64,000 nt of DNA from Ascidiella aspersa (Eukaryota): positions 13,702,001 to 13,766,000 of the forward strand of contig OZ004607.1 of assembly GCA_963924565.1 (NCBI GenBank), given 5' to 3'. The notes under the pieces were generated by a model. It saw nothing but the letters and a program-made list of their open reading frames with translations. It had not been told where the DNA came from and made no database searches. Both the position numbers and the translations under genes were made by a program. Below, in pieces: positions 16,901 through 48,811 of the stretch. Numbering within the stretch: the first letter of the stretch is position 1; each line of letters begins with the position of its first letter.

Positions 16901-19900
16901 CCCATAGCCCAGGGACCCATTCCCATATCTGCCCCACTTTCCTACTCGATGCGCGTTACTATGGCGATGACGGGGGCCTTCAATGACGACTCTATGACGT
17001 CACATGCGTTTCGGTATCCCACAAACGTAAGCAGCAACCTGAAGCAACAATATCCCCAGAAGCAGCAGCAGCCGCCATCTAACCCGCCTCGTCTTCCCAC
17101 CCCTATAAACGTTGCTAAACCTGTCGTGTTGAACACATCGTCTTCATTGAGAAGTCCTCCTAAGCCCAGCAAGTTTCCAAGCCAACCTCAACTGGTACGT
17201 CAAGGGATTTGGGTGATAAATCATATCTAATGCTATTGTTATGTTGTTGAGTCGATCAAAGGGTCTGCATTTTCCTAGCATCAACAACGAACATTATGAG
17301 CCTTACAGTCTATCTCAGGGGTGTCCAACATGCGGCACGCGACCTAATAAAAAATGGCACAAGTCCTCAAAAAATATCTAATTAGTTATTCAGCCAATTG
17401 TCAAAAAAAATACTAAAGTTGTTATACAGCCAATTGCCATTGTCGCGGCAATTACGGCAACTAATAAATACTTCTTGTATTATTATACCATTAGAATATA
17501 CTTTAGTGCAGGCTAGCATTAACAAAATTATATAGTTTGGTGTGAAGAAACAATAAGTAAAAGTCAGCTCACCGACGGATGCTTAGATGCAGTAATGCGC
17601 ATTGCTACAGGCCAATCTATCTTTACAGTTTGGCTTAAAACAAACTTGCGCGAAGAACCAGATTTGGTCAATTATAAATGGTATGCTTGATTAAATAAAC
17701 AAATGTTTTTGTGTAAATTTGTAAAAAGCTCTTATAATATTAGAAAAAAATAGTTACTAAACTTTGGCACGGGAAGAAGTTATAACATAAAAGTTGGCAC
17801 ATCGGCCTGTTTGAGTTGGACACCCCTGGCCAATATTTTTAATTGTACAGCGCACCTATAGCAGAATAATTATTTCCAACCTGAAGGCTTTAACACATGT
17901 CAGCGTGAACCACTATCAATCAGCCAGTGCGCCAAACCCTTGTTTTGCTCGTTTTTAGCAAGGCAACAGCGACCAGCAGATGAACGCACTGGAGCATATG
18001 ATCAACTACTACAGCGCCAAGAATAACTTGACGACGGAAGAGAAGGAGATTGTGCGCTCGATCATCAGCTCTCAGATCCAGACAAACCAGCTTCCCATGC
18101 CAGCAGCCGCCAACACCGCCAGCGATCCTCTTACGAGTCCGGACGTATTAAAACCATCTCAGTCGGTAAAACGCTTTTGTAATACACGCCGTTTTAGTTA
18201 CAGTTTCCAGCTTTTAATTAGTTGGACCTTGGTAAAAAAGACACTGTTTTTATAAAAAAGTTTTCGTTTAAGGAAAATATTTCGTTTCTTTATAACAAAG
18301 ACAATCGTGATGTTTAATACATTGGTCTGTGTTAGTGTCCAAGGAAAATATTATATCGATTTAACGCACATTGAGGAAATCGGGTATTCACGTAGGATGT
18401 TTTTAGTTCGCAGGTTTGATATTGAACTCGTCCGGACAAAATTACACTCGCAAAAAGCCGTCTGCAAACTTCCTTGTTAAATTGTTTTTTCTAGTTGCAT
18501 AACCTTAGGTCGTCTTTGGCGTTCAACATATTTTTTCGCAGATCTACATCAACAAATTTAGTGCAGTTTATTTAATTACAAAAATGTTTTTTTGCACTCT
18601 CCACTCGTGAGTTGTTGTCAAACAGTACAACGCAACGCAATGCACTGGCATTGGCGAGCAGGCGAGTTCAAAATCCCAAACCTGGTCCGCGACTTCAGAC
18701 CATTAAAAGATTATTTGATTACATTACACATCGTATACACAGTTAAGGCCGCCAACGTAAATAAAAAAGCATTTGCGTCTCCATAAGCTTAACCCTTGTG
18801 TATGCTTGCAGTTTCTTCCGTGCGAGACCAAGTTGAAGCAGAAGAAAAGAAAAAGCTCACACGAGCGTGAGAAAAAGGATCGCGGAACGCGAGCCAAGCG
18901 AAAACGATCCCTGGATAAACAATCCCACGATAAACATCACCACCACGTCGCCATCGATGCCCGTTAGTACCATTTTGCCTTTGATACTTTATTTTGTCGA
19001 ACTAAAATGTAGAGTACACTGGCAAGCAGGTGTGGCGGTGCGTGCAGGCGAGATATTTTGCAAAAAACTTAGTCGAATTTATTGTTGCACCGCTTTGATG
19101 TTTGTTATCCTGCTACAGCGTCTAGTTTGGTGGTAAAAAATGCATTCAAGCAACTTAATTTCCTCCCTGCACACCACAACCTATTTCAAGGGCATGGAGG
19201 AGATGTGTGTTCTGACGCTTTAAATCAGGGATCAGGGATGGGCAACCTTTTTCTAGGCCGGGCCAAAACCAAACTCAGAAAGGTCTTTGCGGGCTGCTAA
19301 AAACACAGTTAAAATTTAAAAGACTTACTCATCTTGTTACAACAACCGCAACAACTGTTAATCAGAAATAAAATTAGAGTATTTTGCCATTGAAAAGGTG
19401 TCTAAATACATATATAAGCTATTGCTACCAGGCATAATATCAGGTTTGTAGAGCTCTTCTGGTAAATGTAATTTTTATTCCGACGTTTCGACGTCCTATA
19501 CAGGTCGTCTTCATCAGGGTAAATAACACGGAATGCGACTAGTACAGTGCACGATAAACAAAGGAAAAAAGGAAAAAAGAATGGAACGCAAGCACGTTAC
19601 AACGCAACAAAAACAAAACGCGATAACGAATGATTGGGCCTCTAATCTTTAAGCAGGTGCCTGTAGCACGCTGAAAGCATCACGTCCGTTTTGATGTTCA
19701 TTGTGTTGCCCCGTTGGTGAATAATCCATGACTCAAGAAATAGTCTTTTCCTGTAGTCAGATTCCCGGGCCACAACACGGACGGATCCGCCCCGCGCATC
19801 TACGGCTTACCAAAAATCCACAAAGAAGGCATCCCTCTGCGACCAATTGTTTCGTTTGTTGGTTCTCCAACCTACAACCTTGCGAAGTACCTAGCGAAAG

Positions 19901-22900
19901 TTATTTCTCCGCTCGTGGGCAATACAGAATGGACTGTTTCGAACTCGTCCAAGTTTGTTCAAGAGATAGCACAGTTGCCGCCTCTGTCCTACGAAGAGGT
20001 AATGGTATCGTATGACGTCGTGTCACTTTTTACATGTGTTCCTGTGGAGTTGGCAATGAACATCGCGTCATCCAGGATTATAAACGACTATAGCCTTAAA
20101 GACAGAACACCATGGCTCCCTCTGGATATTGTGGACGGTTTGCGGATTTGCTTGGAGCAATCCTTTTTAACATTCAGGGGAAGCTTTTACCAGCAGGTTC
20201 AAGGCACAGCGATGGGTTCCCCGGTATCTGTGGTTGTCGCGAACATGACAATGGAAGCGCTTGAGGAAAAAGCCTTATCAACATTTGCCTACCCACCAAG
20301 ATTCTGGCGGCGATATGTTGACGACATTTTTTGTGTCATTGATAATAACAAGGTTGAGGCATTTCTACGGCATCTCAACGAGGCGCAACCAGGCATTCGG
20401 TTTACCATGGAACTTCAATCGGTAAACTGTCTTCCATTTTTAGATGTTCAGGTCACAAGAACCGATGATGGTGTCTTGTACTCGAAAGTGTACCACAAGC
20501 CAACGAGTACAGACAGGTATCTCAATTTTCGATCGCATCACCCCACATACCAGAAAAGAGGGGTGGTTCGTTCCCTGAAAGATCGGGCACGACGCTTGTG
20601 CACACTTAACGACGACTGCGAGGCGGAACTGGCGAACGTTCGCAAAGCCTTGAAGTATAATGGCTACCCCAATTGGATTCTCCGTGATCGACGGGCAACT
20701 TGTCCCAAACAGGCGACTCATCCAAAAACAGAGGGTTTTGTGACACTTCCGTACATACCAAAACTGACGGATATTCTGCGGCGTATGTTGCGTGACTTTG
20801 GTGTAGCGGTGGGCGTCCAACCTGCCAATACTCTCCGCAAGCTACTGTGTCACCCGAAAGATCCAATCAACACCTTTGAACAACGAGGTGTTGTATATTC
20901 TATTCCCTGCGCCGAGTGTCCGTTAATATATATCGGAGAGACTGGAAGGTCACTTAACACCCGACGAAAAGAACATCAACGGGATGTTTCCAACAGTGAC
21001 GCGAAGAAGTCGGCCCTCTCCAATCACGCGGTGTCACAGGGCCACCGTATTGATTTTAATGCGGCGTCTGTTGTGGCCCGGGAATCTGACTACAGGAAAA
21101 GACTATTTCTTGAGTCATGGATTATTCACCAACGGGGCAACACAATGAACATCAAAACGGACGTGATGCTTTCAGCGTGCTACAGGCACCTGCTTAAAGA
21201 TTAGAGGCCCAATCATTCGTTATCGCGTTTTGTTTTTGTTGCGTTGTAACGTGCTTGCGTTCCATTCTTTTTTCCTTTTTTCCTTTGTTTATCGTGCACT
21301 GTACTAGTCGCATTCCGTGTTATTTACCCTGATGAAGACGACCTGTATAGGACGTCGAAACGTCGGAATAAAAATTACATTTGCCAGAAGAGCTCTACAA
21401 ACCTGTGTCTAAATACATGTTACTCTCGATGCAGGAACAAGATTTATGTAGTTAAAACACCAAAAAAAATATTAGGAATGGTCTCGTGCACGGTTTATAA
21501 ACTAGGTTCTGCGCCAGATGATTTGCCTTGGCGGGACGGATGTGGCTGGCGTGCTGTAGGTTGCCCACCCCTGCTTTACATGCACGTCGTTTCAAGTTTT
21601 ATATGTATGTAAAAATTCCACGCTTTAAACTAATAAGGTGACTTTGAATATACCTTTTTGAACTTCAAGTCGACATTCCTACCAATCGCAATACAAAGGT
21701 AAAGTTATAAATTCACAACCACTCAGTCAGACAAATACGTGACAAATTAAACTTTCCATTGTCTCCAACCGAATGGAGCGTGGTATATGCGGAGACGGTG
21801 CAACGCTCCTTATTAGTGAGTACTGTATGTTTTCTTGCAGCTTGGGTCGTGCATTCCGACGACGGTTCAGACGAGTCGTCGTGCCTAATGGAAATTTACG
21901 AGCAACGAGCAAAGTGCATCAAAATGCACAAGCAGCCCGCGCTCAAGGTAAGAGAGGTTAACTTAACCTAGCTTTCAATTGCCACTGTCACTACGCTACG
22001 CTAACCTGTAATTAGCTTAACCGGGCGATGACGGATTACAATCGAACTAGTTTATGTTGTGGGAAATTACCTCTTGTTTGAATAGCTTGATCCATTAGCC
22101 ACTAGCAATGTTCGTAAGTGCATTTTGTGGTTTAACCTGTATGCAACTCTTGCTTGCTCTTGGGTTTCCACAAAGTACCGTGATACTAATTTTCGTTTTG
22201 GAAGTTATCCCGCCTAGGCATTAACGTTTCAGGACATTTCCGTATAAGCATTTACGTTTTTTGATTTGCTTCAAGTTGTTTGATCAAAACGATAAAAAAA
22301 AATTTAAATTTGATTCAACATGTATTTTTCTGTGAATCGACGGTGTTACATTTTTTGTTGCAAACATATCTGTCCCTTATATGTTTAACGCCTTATTACC
22401 TATAAGATCGAGACATAAAAATTCGAACATTTTTTTGTATTCGCATTTCCTTTTTCTGAACAAAAAGTGTTGCAGGGCTTCTAGCAAAACTTTGTTTCGC
22501 TTTACAATTGATGTGTTACAAGCCAATATATTTAAATTTTCTTTTAATGACAACTTTGTACATCTGTGTTATAAAGAAACCAAACTTGCTTCATGTCACA
22601 CAATCGTCAATACAACTTATATCAAGCATGTTACGATTGTTACGCCTAAAATGTTAAGCAGACCACTGATACTATTGCTTATTTTGGTAAAAACTGCTTG
22701 TCCGCTTCACGAAACGACACTCCCGAAGATCAATTCCGGCAATCCGATGGGTGTTAAGCACATCTTGTTGGCAATGACAACCTTTAATTACCTCTCGTTA
22801 AGGCGCTTGTGGATATTTTTGTTTCAAATGAAGTTTGAGATATTTTTCATTTGATTTTCGACGCTGATTCGGTTAAAAATAAGTAAAAGAAACAATATTA

Positions 22901-25900
22901 AATAGTCGTTTACTCCTAAAACAGGGTTTATTTGTATGGTCTTCATTGTTTCATAACGTGTCCTTTAATTGTTTAGCTAAATTTACGATTATACTGGTTG
23001 TTTAAAATGGTATACGACATGTAAACATCTCGTTGATCTGTTTGTTGTGTCTCCATTTCTACCTGTCGCCTGCGATTGAAACGCTGCAAGCTAAATTTCT
23101 GCCTGTTATAGTACTATTGTGGTTATCTAAACGCACAGGTATTAAGTACTATAACAGGCTTCTTTAACCATTTTGTAAACATTTTTTTTTTCTAAATGAT
23201 GTTTAAAAAAACTCCCAAGAAAAATTTCCTATTGCCTTATAACAGTGAAAAAGAGTTTTAAAACAAAAAGTTAACCGCTTAATACATAGGATCACAACTC
23301 GGTTTTACGTTTATAAACATTTTTTTCTTGAACCAGGTCCTTTCTATGTACAACATTTTCCTCGGAGACAAAAAGACGAACCGGGAGAACCGCTTGCCCC
23401 CTCCCCCGCCCAACGGGACTTCCCCGGCCGCCAACAAGCGGCCCTACCTCATGTACGAGATAAAGAGCGACGACGGATATTCCGCCAGCGGCCCCGACTT
23501 GCAAGGTGATAAAAACGTCAAAATATTTTTTTACTGGAGTTTGCGACCCTAGTTTTTCCATTGTTGTTGCGTGGTAATCGCCTCGCACTGTTTCTCGCAT
23601 TTTTTTACCTTTTTTTAAGTATATTTTTCACCTTGAAACGTCAGAAATGTCTAACAAAATGATCTACTTTTTCGCTTTTATCATTGCGCAAACTACAGGA
23701 ATGAAGAAATAAAAAGAAATAATTTCCATCTCTTGAAAATATTGGTTTTAATTTATAATATGTTAATTACTTGAAACCTTGAAAAAACTTGATAAGACTG
23801 TCTTTTTTGCTTTTGTTTTGCTAAAACTAAAATGTAAATTTATACCTATTGGAGGAACAGACTTTTCACGTTTACTTATGCTTTTAATTATTAACTTGCA
23901 ACCCCAGAAAAATCGAACTAATCGATTTATTTTTTCGTTTTATCACCATTCATACTAAAGGGATGAGAAAATAGATAGAATAATTCCAACTCCTGTATAA
24001 CATATTTGTATTTAAAAGTTTTGTATCTTAAAACGTTAAAAACAGTCCCTTTTCGCTTTTGTTTACTCAAACTAAAGAGCCACTTCATATTTACTCCAAA
24101 CATGCTGTTTTCACTCAATTAACCTTAAAACCAAGCGGATCTCCATTCGCAGAGCTGATGAACCAGCTGTTCGCCGCCGTCCAAGAGTGCCGCTCCACAG
24201 CCAAGGGGGGAAACCCCTGCCTGGCGCTGACGTCGGTCATGACGCCGCACCGCTTCCTGGGACTTTCCCACGACGCCGTACGCTTCCTGGTCGAGCAGCT
24301 GCCCGGTGCGCGCCACTGCCACCGTTACCGCGCCAAGTACCACAAGCACAAGAAGGCCAAAAACGAGGTGACAACCCTAAACTATGAACTTTGTTTATGT
24401 CCTAGCCTCCGTTGTTGTAATCGACTGGCACAATGATCACCAAACTAACGGCAAACGGACCAGATGCTGCCCTTTAGTTTATTCCTTCGACCCTCGGGAT
24501 AGTTTCTTAATGTTTGTAAAATACGTTTAATTATTACTTTATCAACGGGTATGCTTATCAGATGAATATCCAAGCTTTTTTTATTTTTAATTCATGAAAT
24601 TTTAAACCAAACGAAAATTTGCACGATGACTAAATATTTTAGTAATATTTTTAAAGTTATTTTCGTTTATTAATAAAGTCAAATTAGTTCGAAACAAATT
24701 CTATACGACGTCCTAATTTATTAATATCCTTACGGTTATCTGGTCTGTTCGGTCCTGGGTCACTAGAATGCGCTTTGTCGGCGCCCGAGTTTTGTTGTTG
24801 CGTTAATTTTTTGGCCTTGAATTGCCACCACACCCTCCCGCTTTTCGTTCAAGTGCCGTCTTTTCAACGTAGCCAAGGCCTCGTCTCCGTTGCCGCTTTG
24901 CTGTGGCAAGCGGTGGGCCCATTTGTCTGGCTTAGCAGCCGTTTTTAAGTGTGCCGATTGCTTGATCTGACTGTTGTTGTGACAGTGGCACCACGACACC
25001 GACTCTCTACCTTCGCATTACTTGACGTTCGAGAAACGTTTTTTGAGTGGTTTAATTGAACTCCTATTCAGAATTCGTTTTGATCACTGGCTTCACACTA
25101 GTGAAGCTGGCGAATTTTAATCGTCAAAACATGATTCGAATTCGAATTTTAATTGCAACATTCCTCGATAGTGTTTGATTGGGGACGTTTGTGGCCAGTA
25201 CTTTTTAAGTAAAGTAGTTTTTTTTAAAGCAACCTCTTTTAAAGTTAATTCAACATGTTTTCAGTTGTGGCAATAAGGATAATTCTAGGTACTTTGTCGA
25301 CAGGGCTAATAAACGGGACTTTACTTGAGCTGGCGTGAATGATTACTTACTAAAAAAGCATGAAGTGGTTTTAATCGATTTTAAATTTGGATTTTAGCCC
25401 AAGAGCAGTGTTACGTCATACTAACGCTACAATTAACACCTGTTATGGGTTTTCAAAAAAAATCAAAGCTGAAACTAACAAACTAAATCTTGCACAAGGG
25501 TAACCAAATAAAAAAGGTTCGTCGAACTCTCTGCCAAACAACATTTCCATCGCATTTTTCAATTTAAAAAAAAGAAAAAGCAAATCAAAAACTAACAAAG
25601 TAAAATCTGCACCAAAGTTGTAAACTCGTCGAATTTTGCACGACAGATAACGCACATCAACCCGCACGGCTGCTGTAGGGCCGAGCAGTACAAGGGCCGC
25701 TCCAAGCCCGACATGTTCAGCTTCCTCGCCTCCAAGTATCGAATCCCGCCCGAGTTCGTTCCCGAGCGACATCAGGACGACGACATGATGCAGCTCAGCA
25801 ACAGGTGCTGTAATCTCCTTGTGCTTAGCTCGTTTGGGTGCAATTAGATAGAAATCAGACGAGCCCGTTTCGTGTAATCGTTGTGCTTGCTTTTCTTGGC

Positions 25901-28421
25901 ATTTTTGCATGATAACGGCGAGATTTTTTATGTAATGCGTTTGTCAACTTGTCTGGTAATCTACAAATTGTAAAGGTGTTTTTTTTTTCAATCAAAAGTG
26001 TTGGTATTTGTATCCGATGCATGGAACTTTTTGTACTTTTAATTTGTTGAATTGGAAAACATATCTAATTTCCAAAAAAACTTCCCCAGCAGCTTGAGCA
26101 ATGGGTAGGTTACTCGTTACACTAGGTAAAAAATACACTGCACATTTTGCTTACCGCATTCCTATAGCTCAGAGTGATTCCTTAACTTTTTCAGCTTTTA
26201 AAAGCTTGCGGCACAGTAAGAAAATTAAAAAAAATATTCGCGGCACACTTTCTACAAAACAACAATTTCGTAACTTGACAGTCGCCCCAAATACATGGAA
26301 AGGCAATTGGTAAATGTATTATTAGTTTTCTAATGGACAGTGTGTATTCCAGTTAGTATGGAAATTTGTAATGCAAATTGGTTATTTTCTAATATAACCA
26401 AAAGTTTCGCGACAATCTCTCAAGGCACAGAGTTGAACATTCACTGCTTTAGCTTGAATCAGTGGTTTCAGTGGTAAACCTGTTTAGCAACAACTTTACA
26501 ACTTGGCTGTCGCCCTTAATACATGGAACTGCAATGGGTCCGATTTATATGGAATAGTATGCATCCAAGTCTCGAATGCTTAGTTGTAAACTCTTTTTTA
26601 ACACAAACAGGTTGGTTATCAAAATAACAAAAAGCTACCGACGCACTTAATAATCCTTCACGGTACAGTCACTAGCTTAATGAAAGAAACGCTCTAACGC
26701 TGTCCTACTGTGCACAGGCGAGCGACCAGCATGGAACAGCTGCCGATGGCGATGCGATTCCGCCACTTGCGCACCTTCTCGCGTGAGGCGGTGGGCGTCT
26801 ACCGCTCTTCCATCCACGGCAGGGGTCTCTTTTGTAAGCGCGATGTCGAGGCCGGGGAAATGATCATGGAATACACGGGCGAGGTAAGCTGAGCGTTTGT
26901 CTGGTTGAACAAATACGACGAATCATTTAAAGTTTAGGTGGTAGCTAGGTCAATGTTTGTGTACGGGTCAGAGTGTGAAGTTCCACACGTAAATAACGAG
27001 CTGCCTTTAGGTAAGAACAACTACTTATTTCTGACCAATTAAACTTCCATTGTTGCCAAGGTTGTTTCGGTTATTTCACTTTCCCTAATAATGGTTTGAA
27101 TCGGCAGCGATACCATTCTCAGTATCTGACGAGTACCACTACGACTATCTAGAACCGGTTATCGGATTCTTTTTGACATTATCGCGCATCGCCTATTCTG
27201 TACTAGTAAGAAATTTCATATATGTCTCAGCATCCAACAAATTGGCCTGTTTCAGACCTTGTGGCGGTTTCACGTCCTAATTGTCTTAGAGAGTTTGGTA
27301 TTTAAGCCATAGTTTTATACCAAGAAAGATATGGCTTAATACCCGGGTTAATGCCGAGTTCCTTTATGACGATTTTACCTTTGGCTTGCAATTTAAAATG
27401 TCCGACATCCTAATACCCTGCACCTGACTTTGCTTGGCCAGGTGATACGACGTGAGTTGACCGACAAGCGCGAAAAGTGCTACGAGAGCAAAAGCATCGG
27501 CTGCTACATGTTCCGCATGGACGACTTTTACGTGGTGGACGCAACCATGCGTGGCTCGAGTGCGCGCTTCGTCAACCACTCGTGCGAACCAAACTGCTAC
27601 TCCAGGATTGTCAATGTTGAAGGTACGAGGGGACGGGGTTCACACTTTTCTAACCTTTTTGCGGAATTTTATTTCATGTCCTTTTTTACATAACATTACC
27701 AAGTCGCTAGATATGCCATTCGTCACGATACGGTTATGGTTCTTAAACCATCGGTATTGATACGCAAAAATTAAAGTGTTGCACCCAGTCGTAACCGCAT
27801 TAAAAAAAATATATCAAAAAAATGTAAAAGGCGAATTCGCGTTTTTTATTGAAATAAGCTTAGCATGCATCAACGCTGTATCCACGCCTGTAATATTTGA
27901 CTTGACGCCAGAGCATTTAAACAGGCAAAAAACTTCCCCTTGCGCTTGAATGCCTCTGGCCAACGGCACTAAGCAGGTCTGAAGCTATGGTAAGGCGATC
28001 CGAAAGGAGACTACAAAATCAAGCTTATAGTCTACACCGTATTGCTTGCAAGTTACACAATATTGCTTGCAAATAATTTGGTTTGCATTTTCTAAAGATT
28101 CCGGTGTAGTGCACAGGAAAAACGCTTGCAGAAACTCGAAACCGAAATATTTCGCGTAAGATTGGGGTTAGGGTAGTTAGAGCTAAACCCCGACAAATAT
28201 TCCGCGCTTCCGCAAGCCCTTTTTTGGCGTATTGCCGGCAGCGTTTTGACCGTTTTGCTCGCGTCCTTTTTTCAGGCAAGAAGCACATCGTGATATTCGC
28301 GCTGCGCAAGATCTTCCGCGGCGAGGAACTCACCTACGACTACAAGTTCCCGATCGAGGACGACTCGCACAAGATCACGTGCAACTGCGGCGCGCGCACC
28401 TGTCGCAAGTTCATGAACTGA
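3261..28421 (+). CDS. KMT2A: Histone-lysine N-methyltransferase trithorax / KMT2A-KMT2B (MLL1/2) ortholog, 5'-partial, 22 coding exons
   Basis: Phase-consistent exons: 3261-3428, 4298-4386, 4775-4922, 5322-5475, 5835-5950, 6815-6979, 7618-7849, 9936-10073, 10826-10984, 11667-11863, 12362-12510, 12898-15627(or 15636), 16062-17194, 17959-18165, 18812-18962, 21841-21947, 23337-23505, 24153-24367, 25647-25804, 26718-26883, 27442-27622, 28276-28421. Motifs: [13 protein letters not shown] and [36 protein letters not shown] (PHD2/3), VFPWF (bromo), [21 protein letters not shown] (ePHD), [17 protein letters not shown] (Win), SET and post-SET. The KMT2A vs KMT2B distinction is probably not meaningful for an invertebrate trx ortholog. 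Confidence 0.95.
4961..5129. repeat. Foldback element: ~56-bp inverted arms (4961-5016 / 5074-5129) around a 57-bp loop
   Basis: taaacaaataaaactcaaagtttaaaaacctgagtaaaaccaggatcagacgtttt versus its reverse complement at 5074-5129, about 3 mismatches. Confidence 0.85.
6468..6778. mobile_element. Degenerate hAT-type MITE (same family as 19226-21573)
   Basis: Ends cagggataaggaac...gattgcctacccctg. Internal accaaactcagaaa.gtct.tgcggg is shared with 19268-19294. Confidence 0.6.
7256..7516. repeat. ~33-bp imperfect inverted repeat pair (7256-7288 / 7484-7516), MITE-like
   Basis: cgaaattaaaaacatacccgaatttcttgtagg versus the reverse complement of cctactaggagttcgggtatttttttaatttcg. Confidence 0.6.
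7459..7606. repeat. Minisatellite-like ~21-bp repeats (acccactttaccccagtaggtt) abutting a splice acceptor
   Basis: About 5 imperfect copies visible. Confidence 0.75.
7618..12510 (+). CDS. KMT2A: KMT2/trx exons encoding the extended PHD4 and FYRN (7618-7849, 9936-10073, 10826-10984, 11667-11863, 12362-12510)
   Basis: [13 protein letters not shown] / [27 protein letters not shown] / [14 protein letters not shown]...NYHFMCAR...FCARH / [12 protein letters not shown]...[12 protein letters not shown]. Confidence 0.9.
11344..11528. repeat. Degenerate direct duplication (~78-bp copies, ~108-bp period)
   Basis: gcctgtt.tattttaatta...ctttaaattaaacc occurs twice. Confidence 0.65.
12898..15636 (+). CDS. 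KMT2A: KMT2/trx giant (~2.7 kb) exon encoding a low-complexity S/T/P/E/K-rich linker
   Basis: 932-aa ORF in the track. Acceptor ttttcag at 12891-12897 is in phase 1, matching the upstream donor. The donor is either GT at 15628 or GC at 15637 (both phase 1). Confidence 0.85.
16062..17194 (+). CDS. KMT2A: KMT2/trx 1.1-kb acidic/Pro-rich linker exon
   Basis: Acceptor aaacag ending 16061, open frame continuous with the 354-aa ORF, donor ctg|gtacgt at 17195. Confidence 0.85.
17316..17828 (+). mobile_element. hAT (Charlie-like) non-autonomous element retaining a transposase C-terminal remnant
   Basis: TIR caggggtgtccaac / gttggacacccctg. Internal frame reads [17 protein letters not shown] (~17559-17609), resembling the hAT dimerization-domain tail. 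A second copy lies inverted at 53154-53585. Confidence 0.8.
19474..19526 (-). ncRNA. Second copy of the hammerhead ribozyme in the inverted pLTR
   Basis: Exact reverse complement of 21320-21372. Confidence 0.88.
19780..21204 (+). CDS. PLE reverse transcriptase + GIY-YIG endonuclease (N-terminally truncated, frame intact)
   Basis: [49 protein letters not shown], then [30 protein letters not shown]. The frame is open upstream of the track's 19915 start, back to the pLTR junction. Confidence 0.93.
   Translation, partial: DGSAPRIYGLPKIHKEGIPLRPIVSFVGSPTYNLAKYLAKVISPLVGNTEWTVSNSSKFVQEIAQLPPLSYEEVMVSYDVVSLFTCVPVELAMNIASSRIINDYSLKDRTPWLPLDIVDGLRICLEQSFLTFRGSFYQQVQGTAMGSPVSVVVANMTMEALEEKALSTFAYPPRFWRRYVDDIFCVIDNNKVEAFLRHLNEAQPGIRFTMELQSVNCLPFLDVQVTRTDDGVLYSKVYHKPTSTDRYLNFRSHHPTYQKRGVVRSLKDRARRLCTLNDDCEAELANVRKALKYNGYPNWILRDRRATCPKQATHPKTEGFVTLPYIPKLTDILRRMLRDFGVAVGVQPANTLRKLLCHPKDPINTFEQRGVVYSIPCAECPLIYIGETGRSLNTRRKEHQRDVSNSDAKKSALSNHAVSQGHRIDFNAASVVARESDYRKRLFLESWIIHQRGNTMNIKTDVMLSACYRHLLKD
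21320..21372 (+). ncRNA. Minimal type I hammerhead ribozyme in the PLE pLTR (sense to KMT2 pre-mRNA)
   Basis: CTGATGA (21329-35), stem II GACG-a-CCT-gtat-AGG-a-CGTC, GAAA (21357-60), palindromic ACGT stem III with GTC cleavage triplet, stem I ttattt-a-cc / gg-aataa. Confidence 0.88.
25647..28421 (+). CDS. KMT2A: KMT2/trx Win motif, SET and post-SET exons (25647-25804, 26718-26883, 27442-27622, 28276-28421)
   Basis: [76 protein letters not shown]. Confidence 0.97.
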
Positions 28422-48494: not shown

Positions 48495-48811
48495 ATCAAA
48501 ACACAGCTCCTCTGGTAATTTTAATTCTTCACCAACGTTTCCGCAACCTATGCAAGCCTCCATCTTCAGGGTGAATGACACTAAACGCTCGTACCATAAA
48601 TGGAAAACACACAAAGGCAAAATGCAAGAAAAAATGCGGGCAACTAAACGATAAGAAAATAATTAGCAATAACGTTTTGCCTCTAGTCCTTTAGCTAGTG
48701 CTTGTAGCATGCCGAAAGCATCACGTCTATTTTGATGTTCATGGTGTTACCCTTCTTATGGATGTCCAAGGTTTCAAAAATAATCTTTTTCTGTAGTCTG
48801 ACTCTCTTGCT
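48495..48811 (-). mobile_element. Solo Penelope pLTR (3' end of GIY-YIG ORF + 3'UTR + hammerhead), diverged relative of the 19.4-kb element
   Basis: 48680-48810 aligns by eye to 19640-19770. Flanked by a ~18-bp TSD: atgtagactattttataa (48477-94) / atgtagactatttgtataa (48812-30). Confidence 0.85.
48528..48575 (-). ncRNA. Hammerhead ribozyme motif (degenerate stem II)
   Basis: Minus strand: ttcacc-CTGAAGA-tggaggcttgcataggttgcg-GAAAC-GTT-ggtgaa. Stem I ttcacc/ggtgaa is perfect. Confidence 0.65.

What the first reader, a model, noticed from the sequence alone, without database searches (positions are those of the whole stretch)
19412..21405. Young Penelope-like element with inverted, hammerhead-bearing pLTRs inside the trithorax pre-mRNA: a ribozyme paired with its own antisense
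Seen: an intact RT+GIY-YIG frame flanked by 337-bp inverted repeats differing at one base, a perfect 13-bp TSD and a complete hammerhead in each repeat. Known: PLE pLTRs carry minimal hammerheads that typically act as dimers, and inverted pLTRs occur in Penelope. Inference: on the KMT2 sense transcript the downstream ribozyme (cut after GTC 21364) could sever the pre-mRNA upstream of the FYRC/SET exons. The upstream inverted copy is transcribed first and can lock it in a 337-bp duplex, which may explain tolerance in an essential gene. The duplex is also an ADAR/Dicer substrate that could yield siRNAs against the whole family.
Basis: partly seen in the sequence, partly recalled or inferred. Interest (0 to 1): 0.8.

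Follow-up and report, generated by a model that had tools for sequence, protein, structure and literature searches.

The report
Truncated two-armed Penelope retrotransposon in intron
This is a very recent, still polymorphic and non-functional copy of a Penelope-like retrotransposon in an intron of the trithorax/MLL gene. Its inverted, hammerhead-bearing ends are the normal way this element family inserts, not a device that protects the host gene.

Summary
The sequence features are mostly real. There are 337-nt inverted arms with one mismatch and a 13-14-bp target-site duplication. Each arm holds a Penelope-type minimal hammerhead. An open RT plus GIY-YIG frame lies sense to a KMT2/trithorax gene, upstream of its FYRC and SET exons.

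The frame is not intact. It starts at RT motif 1, with about 320 N-terminal residues and the start codon missing. The arms are not discrete pLTRs but two 5'-truncated copies joined head to head.

The same geometry recurs across the genome. Among 100 listed hammerhead sites there are 20 (-,+) pairs and no (+,-) pairs. Inner arm lengths run from 0 to about 700 nt, and the checked young copies have their own TSDs. In 20 of 20 insertions exactly one end carries the 29-nt PLE "tail". This is the published PLE insertion pattern.

A DNA run from another individual has the empty site, so the insertion is young and polymorphic.

Published assays show single minimal hammerheads do not cleave without a partner or PLE protein, so the ribozyme-masking idea is unnecessary and unsupported. 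The hairpin is thermodynamically certain; the RNA depth was too low to detect editing or cleavage.

The scan flagged similar loci elsewhere in this genome. Verdict: an ordinary new member of a known kind.

The parts
18812..18962 (+). Host KMT2/trx exon upstream of the insertion (inferred; donor GTTAGT at 18963)
   Evidence: Open frame, AG at 18810-11 and GT at 18963-64. RNA reads appear only from bin 18811-18921, with first mate on the - strand, so the RNA is +. No junction read was seen.
18963..21840 (+). Host intron of 2878 nt; 2007 nt of it come from the insertion plus one TSD copy
   Evidence: Splice motifs and frame continuity (phase 1) read. Empty allele.
19233..19411 (.). Left part of a high-copy MITE into which the PLE inserted (TIR cagggatgggcaacc)
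   Evidence: TIR is complementary to 21559-21573. Depth is about 1000x single-copy in DNA run X8.
19398..19411 (.). Left copy of the target-site duplication (gtgtctaaatacat)
   Evidence: joint 19397->21405 with 14 letters fitting both sides.
19412..19440 (-). 29-nt PLE 'tail': the distal 3' end of the element, present only on the inverted arm
   Evidence: Matches the sequence that follows the 21405-equivalent position in other copies. It is absent from the empty allele.
19441..19777 (-). Inverted 5'-truncated copy (left arm): the 3'-terminal 337 nt of the element, including the last 45 codons and stop
19468..19529 (-). Minimal hammerhead on the - strand (predicted cut between 19482 and 19481). 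On the host + transcript this is the antisense of the ribozyme.
19778..21405 (+). 5'-truncated PLE body in sense orientation, with 2-nt microhomology (ca, 19776-77) at the arm/body junction and no tail at its 3' end
19780..21204 (+). ORF remnant of 474 codons plus stop. It runs from RT motif 1 ([11 protein letters not shown]) through YVDD to a GIY-YIG endonuclease with two Cys between GIY and YIG. There is no N-terminal domain and no usable start codon.
21069..21405 (+). Right arm (the part of the body duplicated in inverted form)
21317..21378 (+). Minimal type-I hammerhead, sense to the host gene. CUGAUGA lies at 21329-35, followed by a bulged A. Helix II is GACGACC/GGACGUC. GAAA follows, then a 1-bp helix III inside the palindrome ACGU. 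The cut is after C21364.
21367..21372 (+). AATAAA hexamer 3 nt after the predicted cut site, sense to the host gene
   Evidence: Read. Function not tested.
21405..21418 (.). Right copy of the target-site duplication
21405..21573 (.). Right part of the MITE (TIR ggttgcccacccctg at 21559-21573)
21841..21947 (+). Host exon downstream of the insertion (inferred)
   Evidence: AG at 21839-40, GT at 21948, frame continuity. RNA depth in bins 21808-22000.
24059..28421 (+). Downstream host exons encoding FYRC (24059-24433) and SET/post-SET (26710-28421)
   Evidence: Pfam FYRC E=3.8e-12. SET E=8e-11 and 2.8e-6.

Best explanation
This is a dead-on-arrival copy of an active Penelope-like element (PLE) family, provisionally of Penelope/Poseidon type. 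It inserted recently into a MITE inside a KMT2/trithorax intron.

The structure is two 5'-truncated copies joined head to head, with their 3' ends pointing outward. One end carries the 29-nt tail and the other does not, and a 13-14-bp TSD flanks the whole. This is the footprint of the PLE integration reaction.

In that reaction the GIY-YIG nuclease makes a staggered double-strand break, and both DNA 3' ends prime reverse transcription from the 3' region of element RNA. One end starts at the distal start site (tail copied) and the other at the proximal site (tail not copied). The two cDNAs are joined where they stop, here with 2-nt microhomology at 19776-77.

**What the insertion can and cannot do**
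- It encodes no functional protein.
- Its hammerhead motifs are family cargo. They are conserved for the element's own cycle, are weak, and depend on a dimer or on PLE protein.
- In the host pre-mRNA the arms will form a 337-bp intronic hairpin. This is a passive consequence, not a selected safeguard.
- The insertion is most likely neutral or slightly deleterious, and it is still segregating.

**Shown here**
- The anatomy of the copy.
- The family-wide geometry and the one-tail rule.
- The empty allele.
- Conservation and covariation of the hammerhead.

**Inferred**
- Priming from both ends of the break, drawn from the published in vitro work.
- Lack of ribozyme activity in this context.
- The fitness effect.
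For: **Anatomy of the copy**
- Arms, TSD and junction.
- 5' truncation: the copy aligns to residues 323-790 of a related 790-aa ORF at 47% identity. The longest same-family copy has 103 more codons, including PADKG.
- PLE identity: RVT_1 and GIY-YIG hits in the right order, a weak T4 EndoII hit, and two Cys between GIY and YIG as PMC8557442 describes.

**The geometry is generic in this family**
- The genome holds 132 hammerhead sites, against 0 in the reversed control.
- Among the 100 listed sites there are 20 (-,+) pairs, 0 (+,-) pairs, 2 same-strand pairs and 56 singles; binomial p=1.9e-6.
- Inner arm lengths run from 0 to 706 nt.
- Several young two-armed copies have their own TSDs of about 10-15 bp.
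- Exactly one tail per insertion in 20 of 20.

**Literature**
- An inverted 5'-truncated copy and a one-ended 30-40-bp tail are typical of PLEs (PMC8557442).
- The PLE protein cleaves and extends both strands; two RT start sites delimit the tail (PMC11167929).
- The PLE hammerhead needs PLE protein, and no RNA-seq read ends were found at its cut site (PMC11167929).
- Single minimal hammerheads do not cleave (PMC4209133).

**Youth and polymorphism**
- The arm is 100% identical to three other loci.
- Run X8 has a contig at single-copy depth (103.6) that crosses the empty site.

**RNA**
- No pile of read ends at 21364 and no A>G excess, at very low depth.
Against: - Activity of this particular hammerhead was not measured.
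- RNA coverage was only a few reads per bin, so cleavage, editing and small RNAs are untested.
- I could not classify the roughly 78 insertions by gene context. A bias of two-armed copies toward sense introns is therefore not excluded.
- No independent read set confirmed the filled allele. Only the assembly carries it; run X8 lacks it.
- Priming from both ends is extrapolated from an Anolis element in vitro.
- Pfam scores for RVT_1 and GIY-YIG are below the curated cut-offs.
Confidence: 0.8

Rival explanations
1. One reading: the sense hammerhead would sever the trithorax pre-mRNA. The upstream inverted arm, transcribed first, traps it in a duplex, and possibly the adjacent AAUAAA as well. This trapping is why a sense insertion in an essential gene is tolerated.
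For: - The geometry is right: the antisense arm lies upstream on the sense transcript.
- The minimum-energy fold pairs 333 of 337 arm positions and fully buries the hammerhead. The duplex energy is -654.7 kcal/mol, against -16.2 for the local hammerhead fold.
- The stem would zip from the loop-proximal end before the hammerhead is transcribed (inference).
- AATAAA lies at 21367-72.
Against: - Single minimal PLE hammerheads show no detectable cleavage. They need a dimer or PLE protein (PMC4209133, PMC11167929).
- No second sense hammerhead lies on the + strand of the window.
- The two-armed form is generic: 20 pairs genome-wide, with arms down to 0-46 nt that cannot mask anything.
- The insertion is polymorphic, so tolerance is unproven.
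- From my own knowledge, not checked here: cleaving an intron co-transcriptionally with a hammerhead does not by itself block splicing (exon tethering; Dye, Gromak and Proudfoot 2006).
Confidence: 0.06
2. The intronic hairpin acts as a hairpin-RNA locus. When the host gene is transcribed, it yields a 337-bp dsRNA that Dicer and/or an ADAR-type deaminase processes. This gives siRNAs against the whole PLE family, as a by-product that helps silence it.
For: - A near-perfect 337-bp duplex is predicted.
- Penelope copies with long inverted repeats give siRNAs that map precisely to the inverted regions in transformed D. melanogaster (PMC3681739).
- The genome has three loci with the A_deamin domain.
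- Family reads occur on both strands at low level.
Against: - No small-RNA data were available.
- The RNA run shows no A>G or T>C excess (A>G 8, T>C 6, against C>T 7, G>A 6), at very low depth.
- The A_deamin loci may be ADAT1 rather than ADAR; this was not resolved.
- Even if true, it would hold for all 20 or more two-armed copies. It would be a consequence of the structure, not a function of this locus.
Confidence: 0.2
3. Assembly artefact: the inverted duplication was created by mis-joining reads from different PLE copies.
For: - PLE tandem and inverted structures are known to trouble assemblies (PMC8557442).
- No independent read set laid here confirms the filled allele; run X8 carries the empty site.
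Against: - A perfect 14-bp TSD brackets the insertion exactly and matches the empty-site contig.
- The copy shows the one-tail asymmetry and the same architecture seen at 19 other loci, several of which have their own TSDs.
- The assembly has only 75 contigs.
Confidence: 0.02

Closest known systems
Canonical EN+ Penelope-like elements with complex tandem/inverted insertions and a one-ended 30-40-bp tail (Evgen'ev & Arkhipova 2005; Arkhipova 2006; Craig et al. 2021, PMC8557442, Fig. 2)
   Same: - RT followed by a C-terminal GIY-YIG with two Cys between GIY and YIG.
- Heavy 5' truncation.
- An inverted 5'-truncated copy next to the body.
- A tail at only one end.
- A variable-length TSD.
- A hammerhead in the terminal region.
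   Different: - This copy has no direct pLTR or partial tandem.
- No full-length copy of the same family appeared among the candidates scored.
- The host is reportedly an ascidian (earlier scan note, not verified here).
- Clade assignment to Penelope/Poseidon rests only on the absence of a CX2-5CxxC linker motif, not on a tree.
PAc (Poseidon of Anolis carolinensis) in vitro system (Frangieh et al. 2024, PMC11167929)
   Same: - Both target strands are cleaved and extended.
- Two adjacent RT start sites define the tail.
- The hammerhead is inactive without PLE protein.
- The target is AT-rich; here it is ...aaatacat.
   Different: [quoted passage not shown] Here each of 20 two-armed genomic insertions has exactly one tailed end, which suggests the choice is coupled in vivo.
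Minimal hammerheads of metazoan PLEs (Cervera & de la Pena 2014, PMC4209133; Lunse et al. 2017, cited in PMC6765202)
   Same: - A type-I motif with a long helix II (7 bp).
- An unpaired nucleotide between A9 and G10.1.
- An invariant G10.1-C11.1 pair.
- A 1-bp helix III within a palindrome (ACGU).
- A short helix I.
- 'Dual' motifs on opposite strands 100-700 bp apart are reported there too.
   Different: Nothing essential. Like other minimal hammerheads, it is not picked up by the Rfam models.
Intronic hammerheads of amniotes (HH9/HH10; de la Pena & Garcia-Robles 2010, cited in PMC6765202)
   Same: A hammerhead in sense orientation inside an intron of a protein-coding gene.
   Different: Those are canonical ribozymes with tertiary loop contacts, and they are ultraconserved single-copy elements. 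This one is a days-old, polymorphic transposon cargo with a minimal helix III that depends on forming a dimer.
L1 twin-priming inversions, and inverted Alu pairs as dsRNA/ADAR substrates (from my own knowledge)
   Same: - A second DNA end primes reverse transcription and yields an inverted 5' segment.
- Inverted retroelement pairs in introns form dsRNA.
   Different: In L1 twin priming the inverted segment is a different, upstream part of the same RNA. Here both arms copy the same 3' end, so the 3' region was copied twice.

Membership tests
Penelope-like element (canonical, C-terminal EN+) | Reverse transcriptase domain with the PLE motif order (PKIHK / RPIVS, then D of motif [13 protein letters not shown]) | tested here: met
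   - Pfam RVT_1 E=2.5e-5, 24.5 bits, below the 29.6-bit cut-off.
- Motifs are read directly from the translation.
- 47% identity over 471 aa to a 790-aa RT-EN ORF in the same genome.
- Placement in the PLE clade by phylogeny was not done.
Penelope-like element (canonical, C-terminal EN+) | C-terminal GIY-YIG endonuclease with the PLE-specific CCHH motif (two Cys between GIY and YIG) | tested here: met
   - Pfam GIY-YIG E=0.0034, 18.1 bits, below the 22.6-bit cut-off.
- PDB 2wsh (T4 endonuclease II) E=0.066.
- The sequence [20 protein letters not shown]...KEH shows the two Cys between GIY and YIG. The criterion comes from PMC8557442.
Penelope-like element (canonical, C-terminal EN+) | N-terminal domain with the DKG motif | tested here: not met
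   Absent from the window copy because of 5' truncation at 19778. Present (PADKGNCTVIM) in a longer same-family copy. This bears on whether the copy is intact, not on family membership.
Penelope-like element (canonical, C-terminal EN+) | Hammerhead motif in the terminal repeat region | tested here: met
   the core is invariant, and helix II is 95.7% paired with compensatory changes at 6 of 7 pairs across four families.
Penelope-like element (canonical, C-terminal EN+) | [quoted passage not shown] | tested here: met
   - A 29-nt tail on the left end only.
- One tail per insertion in 20 of 20.
- TSD of 13-14 bp here and about 10-15 bp in several other young copies.
Penelope-like element (canonical, C-terminal EN+) | Direct pseudo-LTRs formed by partial tandem copies | tested here: not met
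   This copy has no direct repeat. Only 2 same-strand hammerhead pairs occur among the 100 listed sites. The literature allows inverted forms (PMC8557442).
Type-I minimal hammerhead ribozyme (PLE type) | Conserved catalytic core: C3 U4 G5 A6 N7 G8 A9, G12 A13 A14, A15.1-U16.1, H17 | tested here: met
   All positions are present at 21329-21364. They are invariant in 10 sequences from four families.
Type-I minimal hammerhead ribozyme (PLE type) | Helix II supported by covariation, an extra nucleotide after A9, and a G10.1-C11.1 pair | tested here: met
   covariation score 0.371 against 0.192 when shuffled (0 of 500 shuffles reach it), and slid controls score at most 0.154.
Type-I minimal hammerhead ribozyme (PLE type) | Match to curated Rfam hammerhead models | tested here: not met
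   No hit at E<=1 over 18500-22500. This is expected for a 1-bp helix III.
Type-I minimal hammerhead ribozyme (PLE type) | Self-cleavage at the predicted site | not testable with these tools
   No read-end pile at 21364 in RNA run X13, but depth was only a few reads.
L1-type twin-priming inversion | The inverted segment is a different, more 5' part of the same template and does not overlap the 3' segment | tested here: not met
   Both arms contain the same 3'-terminal 337 nt.

The most novel reading that the evidence does not exclude
Two readings remain open.

(a) Two-armed PLE copies are preferentially tolerated in sense introns. Their built-in antisense arm would neutralise the 3'-end signals of the element: the hammerhead plus the AAUAAA 3 nt after it.

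(b) The strict rule of exactly one tail per two-armed insertion (20 of 20) reports an obligatorily asymmetric dimeric integration complex. Such a complex would use the two RT start sites once each.

Only (b) has data behind it here, and it extends rather than overturns published work.
Probability: 0.08. Interest if true: 0.55.

Novelty: new member of a known kind. Interest (0 to 1): 0.2.

Why it matters
For the host gene, the finding is a cautionary example. A striking 'ribozyme paired with its own antisense' turns out to be the routine scar of Penelope-like integration. It calls for no special mechanism.

The locus is still useful in three ways:
- It is a clean natural snapshot of a very recent PLE insertion, with the matching empty allele available.
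- The family census gives an in vivo counterpart to the 2024 in vitro result that both target strands are extended from two RT start sites. It adds the stricter observation that each two-armed insertion has exactly one tailed end (20 of 20).
- It shows an active PLE family in what is reportedly an ascidian genome, with about 130 near-identical hammerhead sites. A polymorphic 337-bp hairpin in an essential gene's intron could serve as a natural test of dsRNA processing.

Tried and rejected
- **Rfam scan** (evalue mode, 18500-22500): no hammerhead hit. I relied instead on a manual descriptor and on covariation.
- **RNA evidence:** Splice junctions, cleavage ends, editing and poly(A) use could not be assessed. 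No small-RNA library was available.
- **Full-length source copy:** the search found only copies reaching at most about 325 nt upstream of the window's junction. Only the best candidates are scored, so a full-length copy may still exist.
- **Literature:** Lunse et al. 2017 was not held. I cite it only through PMC6765202.
- **Mosquito guess:** I first took the genome for a mosquito because of the MITE. An earlier scan note says sea squirt; I did not verify the species.
- **Coordinates:** I first misplaced the TSD and tail by one base and corrected this against the ruler and the joint.
- **Constraints kept:** Copies were only compared and described. The spliced host model was not joined or searched.

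Full report
**1. What is in the sequence**

The region holds a perfect-looking inverted repeat. Its arms are 19441-19777 and 21069-21405: 337 nt, 1291 nt apart, with a single mismatch (19463 T against G at 21383). Reads and contigs of the repeat family all show C at 19463, so the T is private to the left arm.

The insertion is bracketed by gtgtctaaatacat at 19398-19411 and 21405-21418.

The long open frame (19744-21204) opens inside the inverted arm. Real element coding begins at the junction 19778, with ...[26 protein letters not shown]. It then runs through [15 protein letters not shown] and YVDD to [20 protein letters not shown]...KEH and a stop at 21202-21204.

Pfam gives RVT_1 (E=2.5e-5) followed by GIY-YIG (E=0.0034). 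Both are below their curated cut-offs but in the PLE order. PDB gives a weak hit to T4 endonuclease II, a GIY-YIG enzyme. Two cysteines between GIY and YIG are the PLE-specific CCHH signature described in PMC8557442. I see no CX2-5CxxC linker motif, which points provisionally to the Penelope/Poseidon clade.

**2. The copy is 5'-truncated, not intact**

- Its 474 residues align to residues 323-790 of a complete 790-aa ATG-initiated ORF of a related family in the same genome, at 47% identity.
- The longest same-family copy found has 103 more codons upstream, including the diagnostic PADKG motif.
- The window copy lacks that domain. Its first in-frame Met lies after RT motifs 1-2.
- It is therefore a dead-on-arrival copy.

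**3. The hammerhead**

Rfam finds nothing at E<=1. By direct reading, however, 21317-21378 has every feature that Cervera and de la Pena (PMC4209133) list for metazoan PLE minimal hammerheads:
- CUGAUGA at 21329-35.
- An unpaired A after A9.
- A 7-bp helix II (GACGACC/GGACGUC) starting with G10.1-C11.1.
- GAAA.
- A 1-bp helix III inside the palindrome ACGU.
- GUC, with the cut after C21364.
- A short helix I.

The same motif lies on the - strand in the left arm (19468-19529).

Four PLE families of this genome share the architecture; the relatives are roughly 47-75% identical to this one at protein level. In a 10-sequence alignment the core is invariant. Helix II is 95.7% paired, with compensatory changes at 6 of 7 pairs. 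The covariation score is 0.371 against 0.192 for shuffles (0 of 500 reach it), and slid controls score at most 0.154. Helix I is weak, with two invariant C-G pairs. The motif is real and conserved.

**4. Host context**

Downstream + strand ORFs hit FYRC (E=3.8e-12) and SET (E=8e-11 and 2.8e-6), ending in a post-SET tail at 28421. The gene is therefore a KMT2/trithorax type on the + strand, and the element body is sense to it.

From splice motifs, frame continuity and RNA depth, the flanking exons are about 18812-18962 and 21841-21947. The intron is 18963-21840. No junction read was recovered.

The element sits inside a high-copy MITE, with TIRs at 19233-19247 and 21559-21573. An earlier scan note calls the organism a sea squirt; I did not verify that.

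**5. The insertion is young and polymorphic**

The right arm is 100% identical to three other loci.

In DNA run X8, a 1420-nt contig at single-copy depth (103.6) runs from the unique exon/intron flank (18700-19397) straight into 21405-21577. It skips 2007 nt, with 14 letters fitting both sides. It differs from the window by SNPs and small indels, so it is another haplotype.

That contig is the empty site. It confirms the TSD. It also shows that the 29 nt at 19412-19440 belong to the insertion.

**6. The two-armed form is generic for this family**

The 38-nt hammerhead core occurs 132 times in the genome (80 or more exact), against 0 for the reversed control. The 100 listed sites break down as follows:

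| Arrangement within 5 kb | Count |
|---|---|
| (-,+) pairs | 20 |
| (+,-) pairs | 0 |
| Same-strand pairs | 2 |
| Singles | 56 |

The binomial p for 20 against 0 is 1.9e-6. Every pair is therefore head to head, with the element 3' ends pointing outward.

Arm lengths vary continuously, from a tail-only stub through 13, 38, 73-140 and 300-700 nt. Several young pairs have their own TSDs of about 10-15 bp.

The 29 nt at 19412-19440 are the reverse complement of the sequence that follows the 21405-equivalent position in other copies. They are the PLE 'tail'. In 20 of 20 two-armed insertions examined, exactly one end carries the tail. Under independent 50:50 choice this would have p of about 1e-6. 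The tail is on the shorter arm in about 15 of the 20.

**7. Comparison with the literature**

- Craig et al. (PMC8557442) describe PLE insertions as highly 5'-truncated. [quoted passage not shown]
- Frangieh et al. (PMC11167929) show that a purified PLE protein cleaves and extends both DNA strands, and that RT starts at two adjacent internal sites whose interval is the tail. Their hammerhead does not cleave without the PLE protein, and no RNA-seq reads end at its cut site.
- Cervera and de la Pena found no detectable cleavage by single minimal hammerheads and only weak cleavage by dimers. They also noted dual motifs on opposite strands.
- Evgen'ev (PMC3681739) reports that rearranged Penelope copies with long inverted repeats give siRNAs that map exactly to the inverted regions.

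Every element of the observation, and the dsRNA/siRNA corollary, is therefore already known for PLEs.

**8.

The hairpin is physically certain. The minimum-energy fold of the 1994-nt slice 19413-21406 pairs 333 of 337 arm positions and buries the hammerhead. The duplex energy is -654.7 kcal/mol, against -16.2 for the local hammerhead fold.

The premise that the ribozyme needs restraining is not supported:
- A lone minimal hammerhead is inactive in the published assays.
- No second sense hammerhead lies on the + strand of the 64-kb window.
- The architecture appears everywhere in the genome, including arms too short to mask anything.
- The allele is still segregating, so tolerance has not been demonstrated.

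The RNA run shows exon reads on the expected strand and low bidirectional family signal. It shows no pile of ends at 21364 and no A>G excess, but the depth is far too low to count as a test.

Three A_deamin loci exist in the genome, so an ADAR-type enzyme is possible but not shown.

**9. Verdict**

This is an ordinary, very recent, polymorphic, dead-on-arrival two-armed PLE insertion. It is a new family member of a well-described kind.

The one-tail-per-insertion regularity and the matched empty allele are its useful by-products.

Two first-reader notes from this scan flag similar hammerhead-bearing inverted PLE copies elsewhere in the same genome, which agrees with the census.

Noticed in passing
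G000-wide; examples L001, L022, L025, L077-L082; window 19412-19440: In 20 of 20 two-armed insertions of this PLE family, exactly one outward end carries the 29-nt tail. The tail is on the shorter arm in about 15 of the 20. The published in vitro work saw no strand difference in RT start site, so the in vivo choice looks coupled between the two ends of one break.
   Followed up: partly
window 21367-21372: A canonical AATAAA hexamer lies 3 nt after the predicted hammerhead cut site, in sense to the host gene. It could be a premature poly(A) signal inside the intron, and it is also buried in the predicted hairpin. It is not conserved in all related families.
   Followed up: no
window 19233-19411 and 21405-21573: The PLE landed inside a MITE of about 334 bp with TIRs CAGGGATGGGCAACC / GGTTGCCCACCCCTG. 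The core of this MITE reaches about 1000x single-copy depth in a DNA run and is abundant in RNA reads on both strands.
   Followed up: partly
window 48520-48581 (- strand): A degenerate hammerhead resembling the family-B PLE motif (GTGTCATTCACC CTGAAGA ... GAAACGTT) lies downstream of the trx gene. It is probably an old PLE 3'-end fragment.
   Followed up: no
L053 (G000:C3:7033869-7038266), - strand 1492-3864: A related PLE family (47% identity) has an uninterrupted 790-aa ATG-initiated RT-EN ORF. PLE families with complete frames therefore coexist with the truncated family studied here. It is described only and was not examined further.
   Followed up: no
G000:C9:10142769-10143345 and G000:C5:15714028-15716083: These are the only two same-strand (direct) hammerhead pairs among the 100 listed sites, spaced 347 and 2018 nt. 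They may be partial tandems (pLTR-type) or retrozyme-like repeats.
   Followed up: no
window 630-1610 (- strand): A 326-aa ORF with a weak DUF7041 hit (E=2.6e-5) lies antisense to the trx gene. An earlier first-reader note (s1-790913) calls it a solo gag.
   Followed up: no
window 21549-21683: In DNA run X8 this stretch is covered by two contigs of depth 43 and 57.6, each with 9-10 differences from the window. The sampled individual therefore carries two diverged haplotypes, both lacking the insertion.
   Followed up: no
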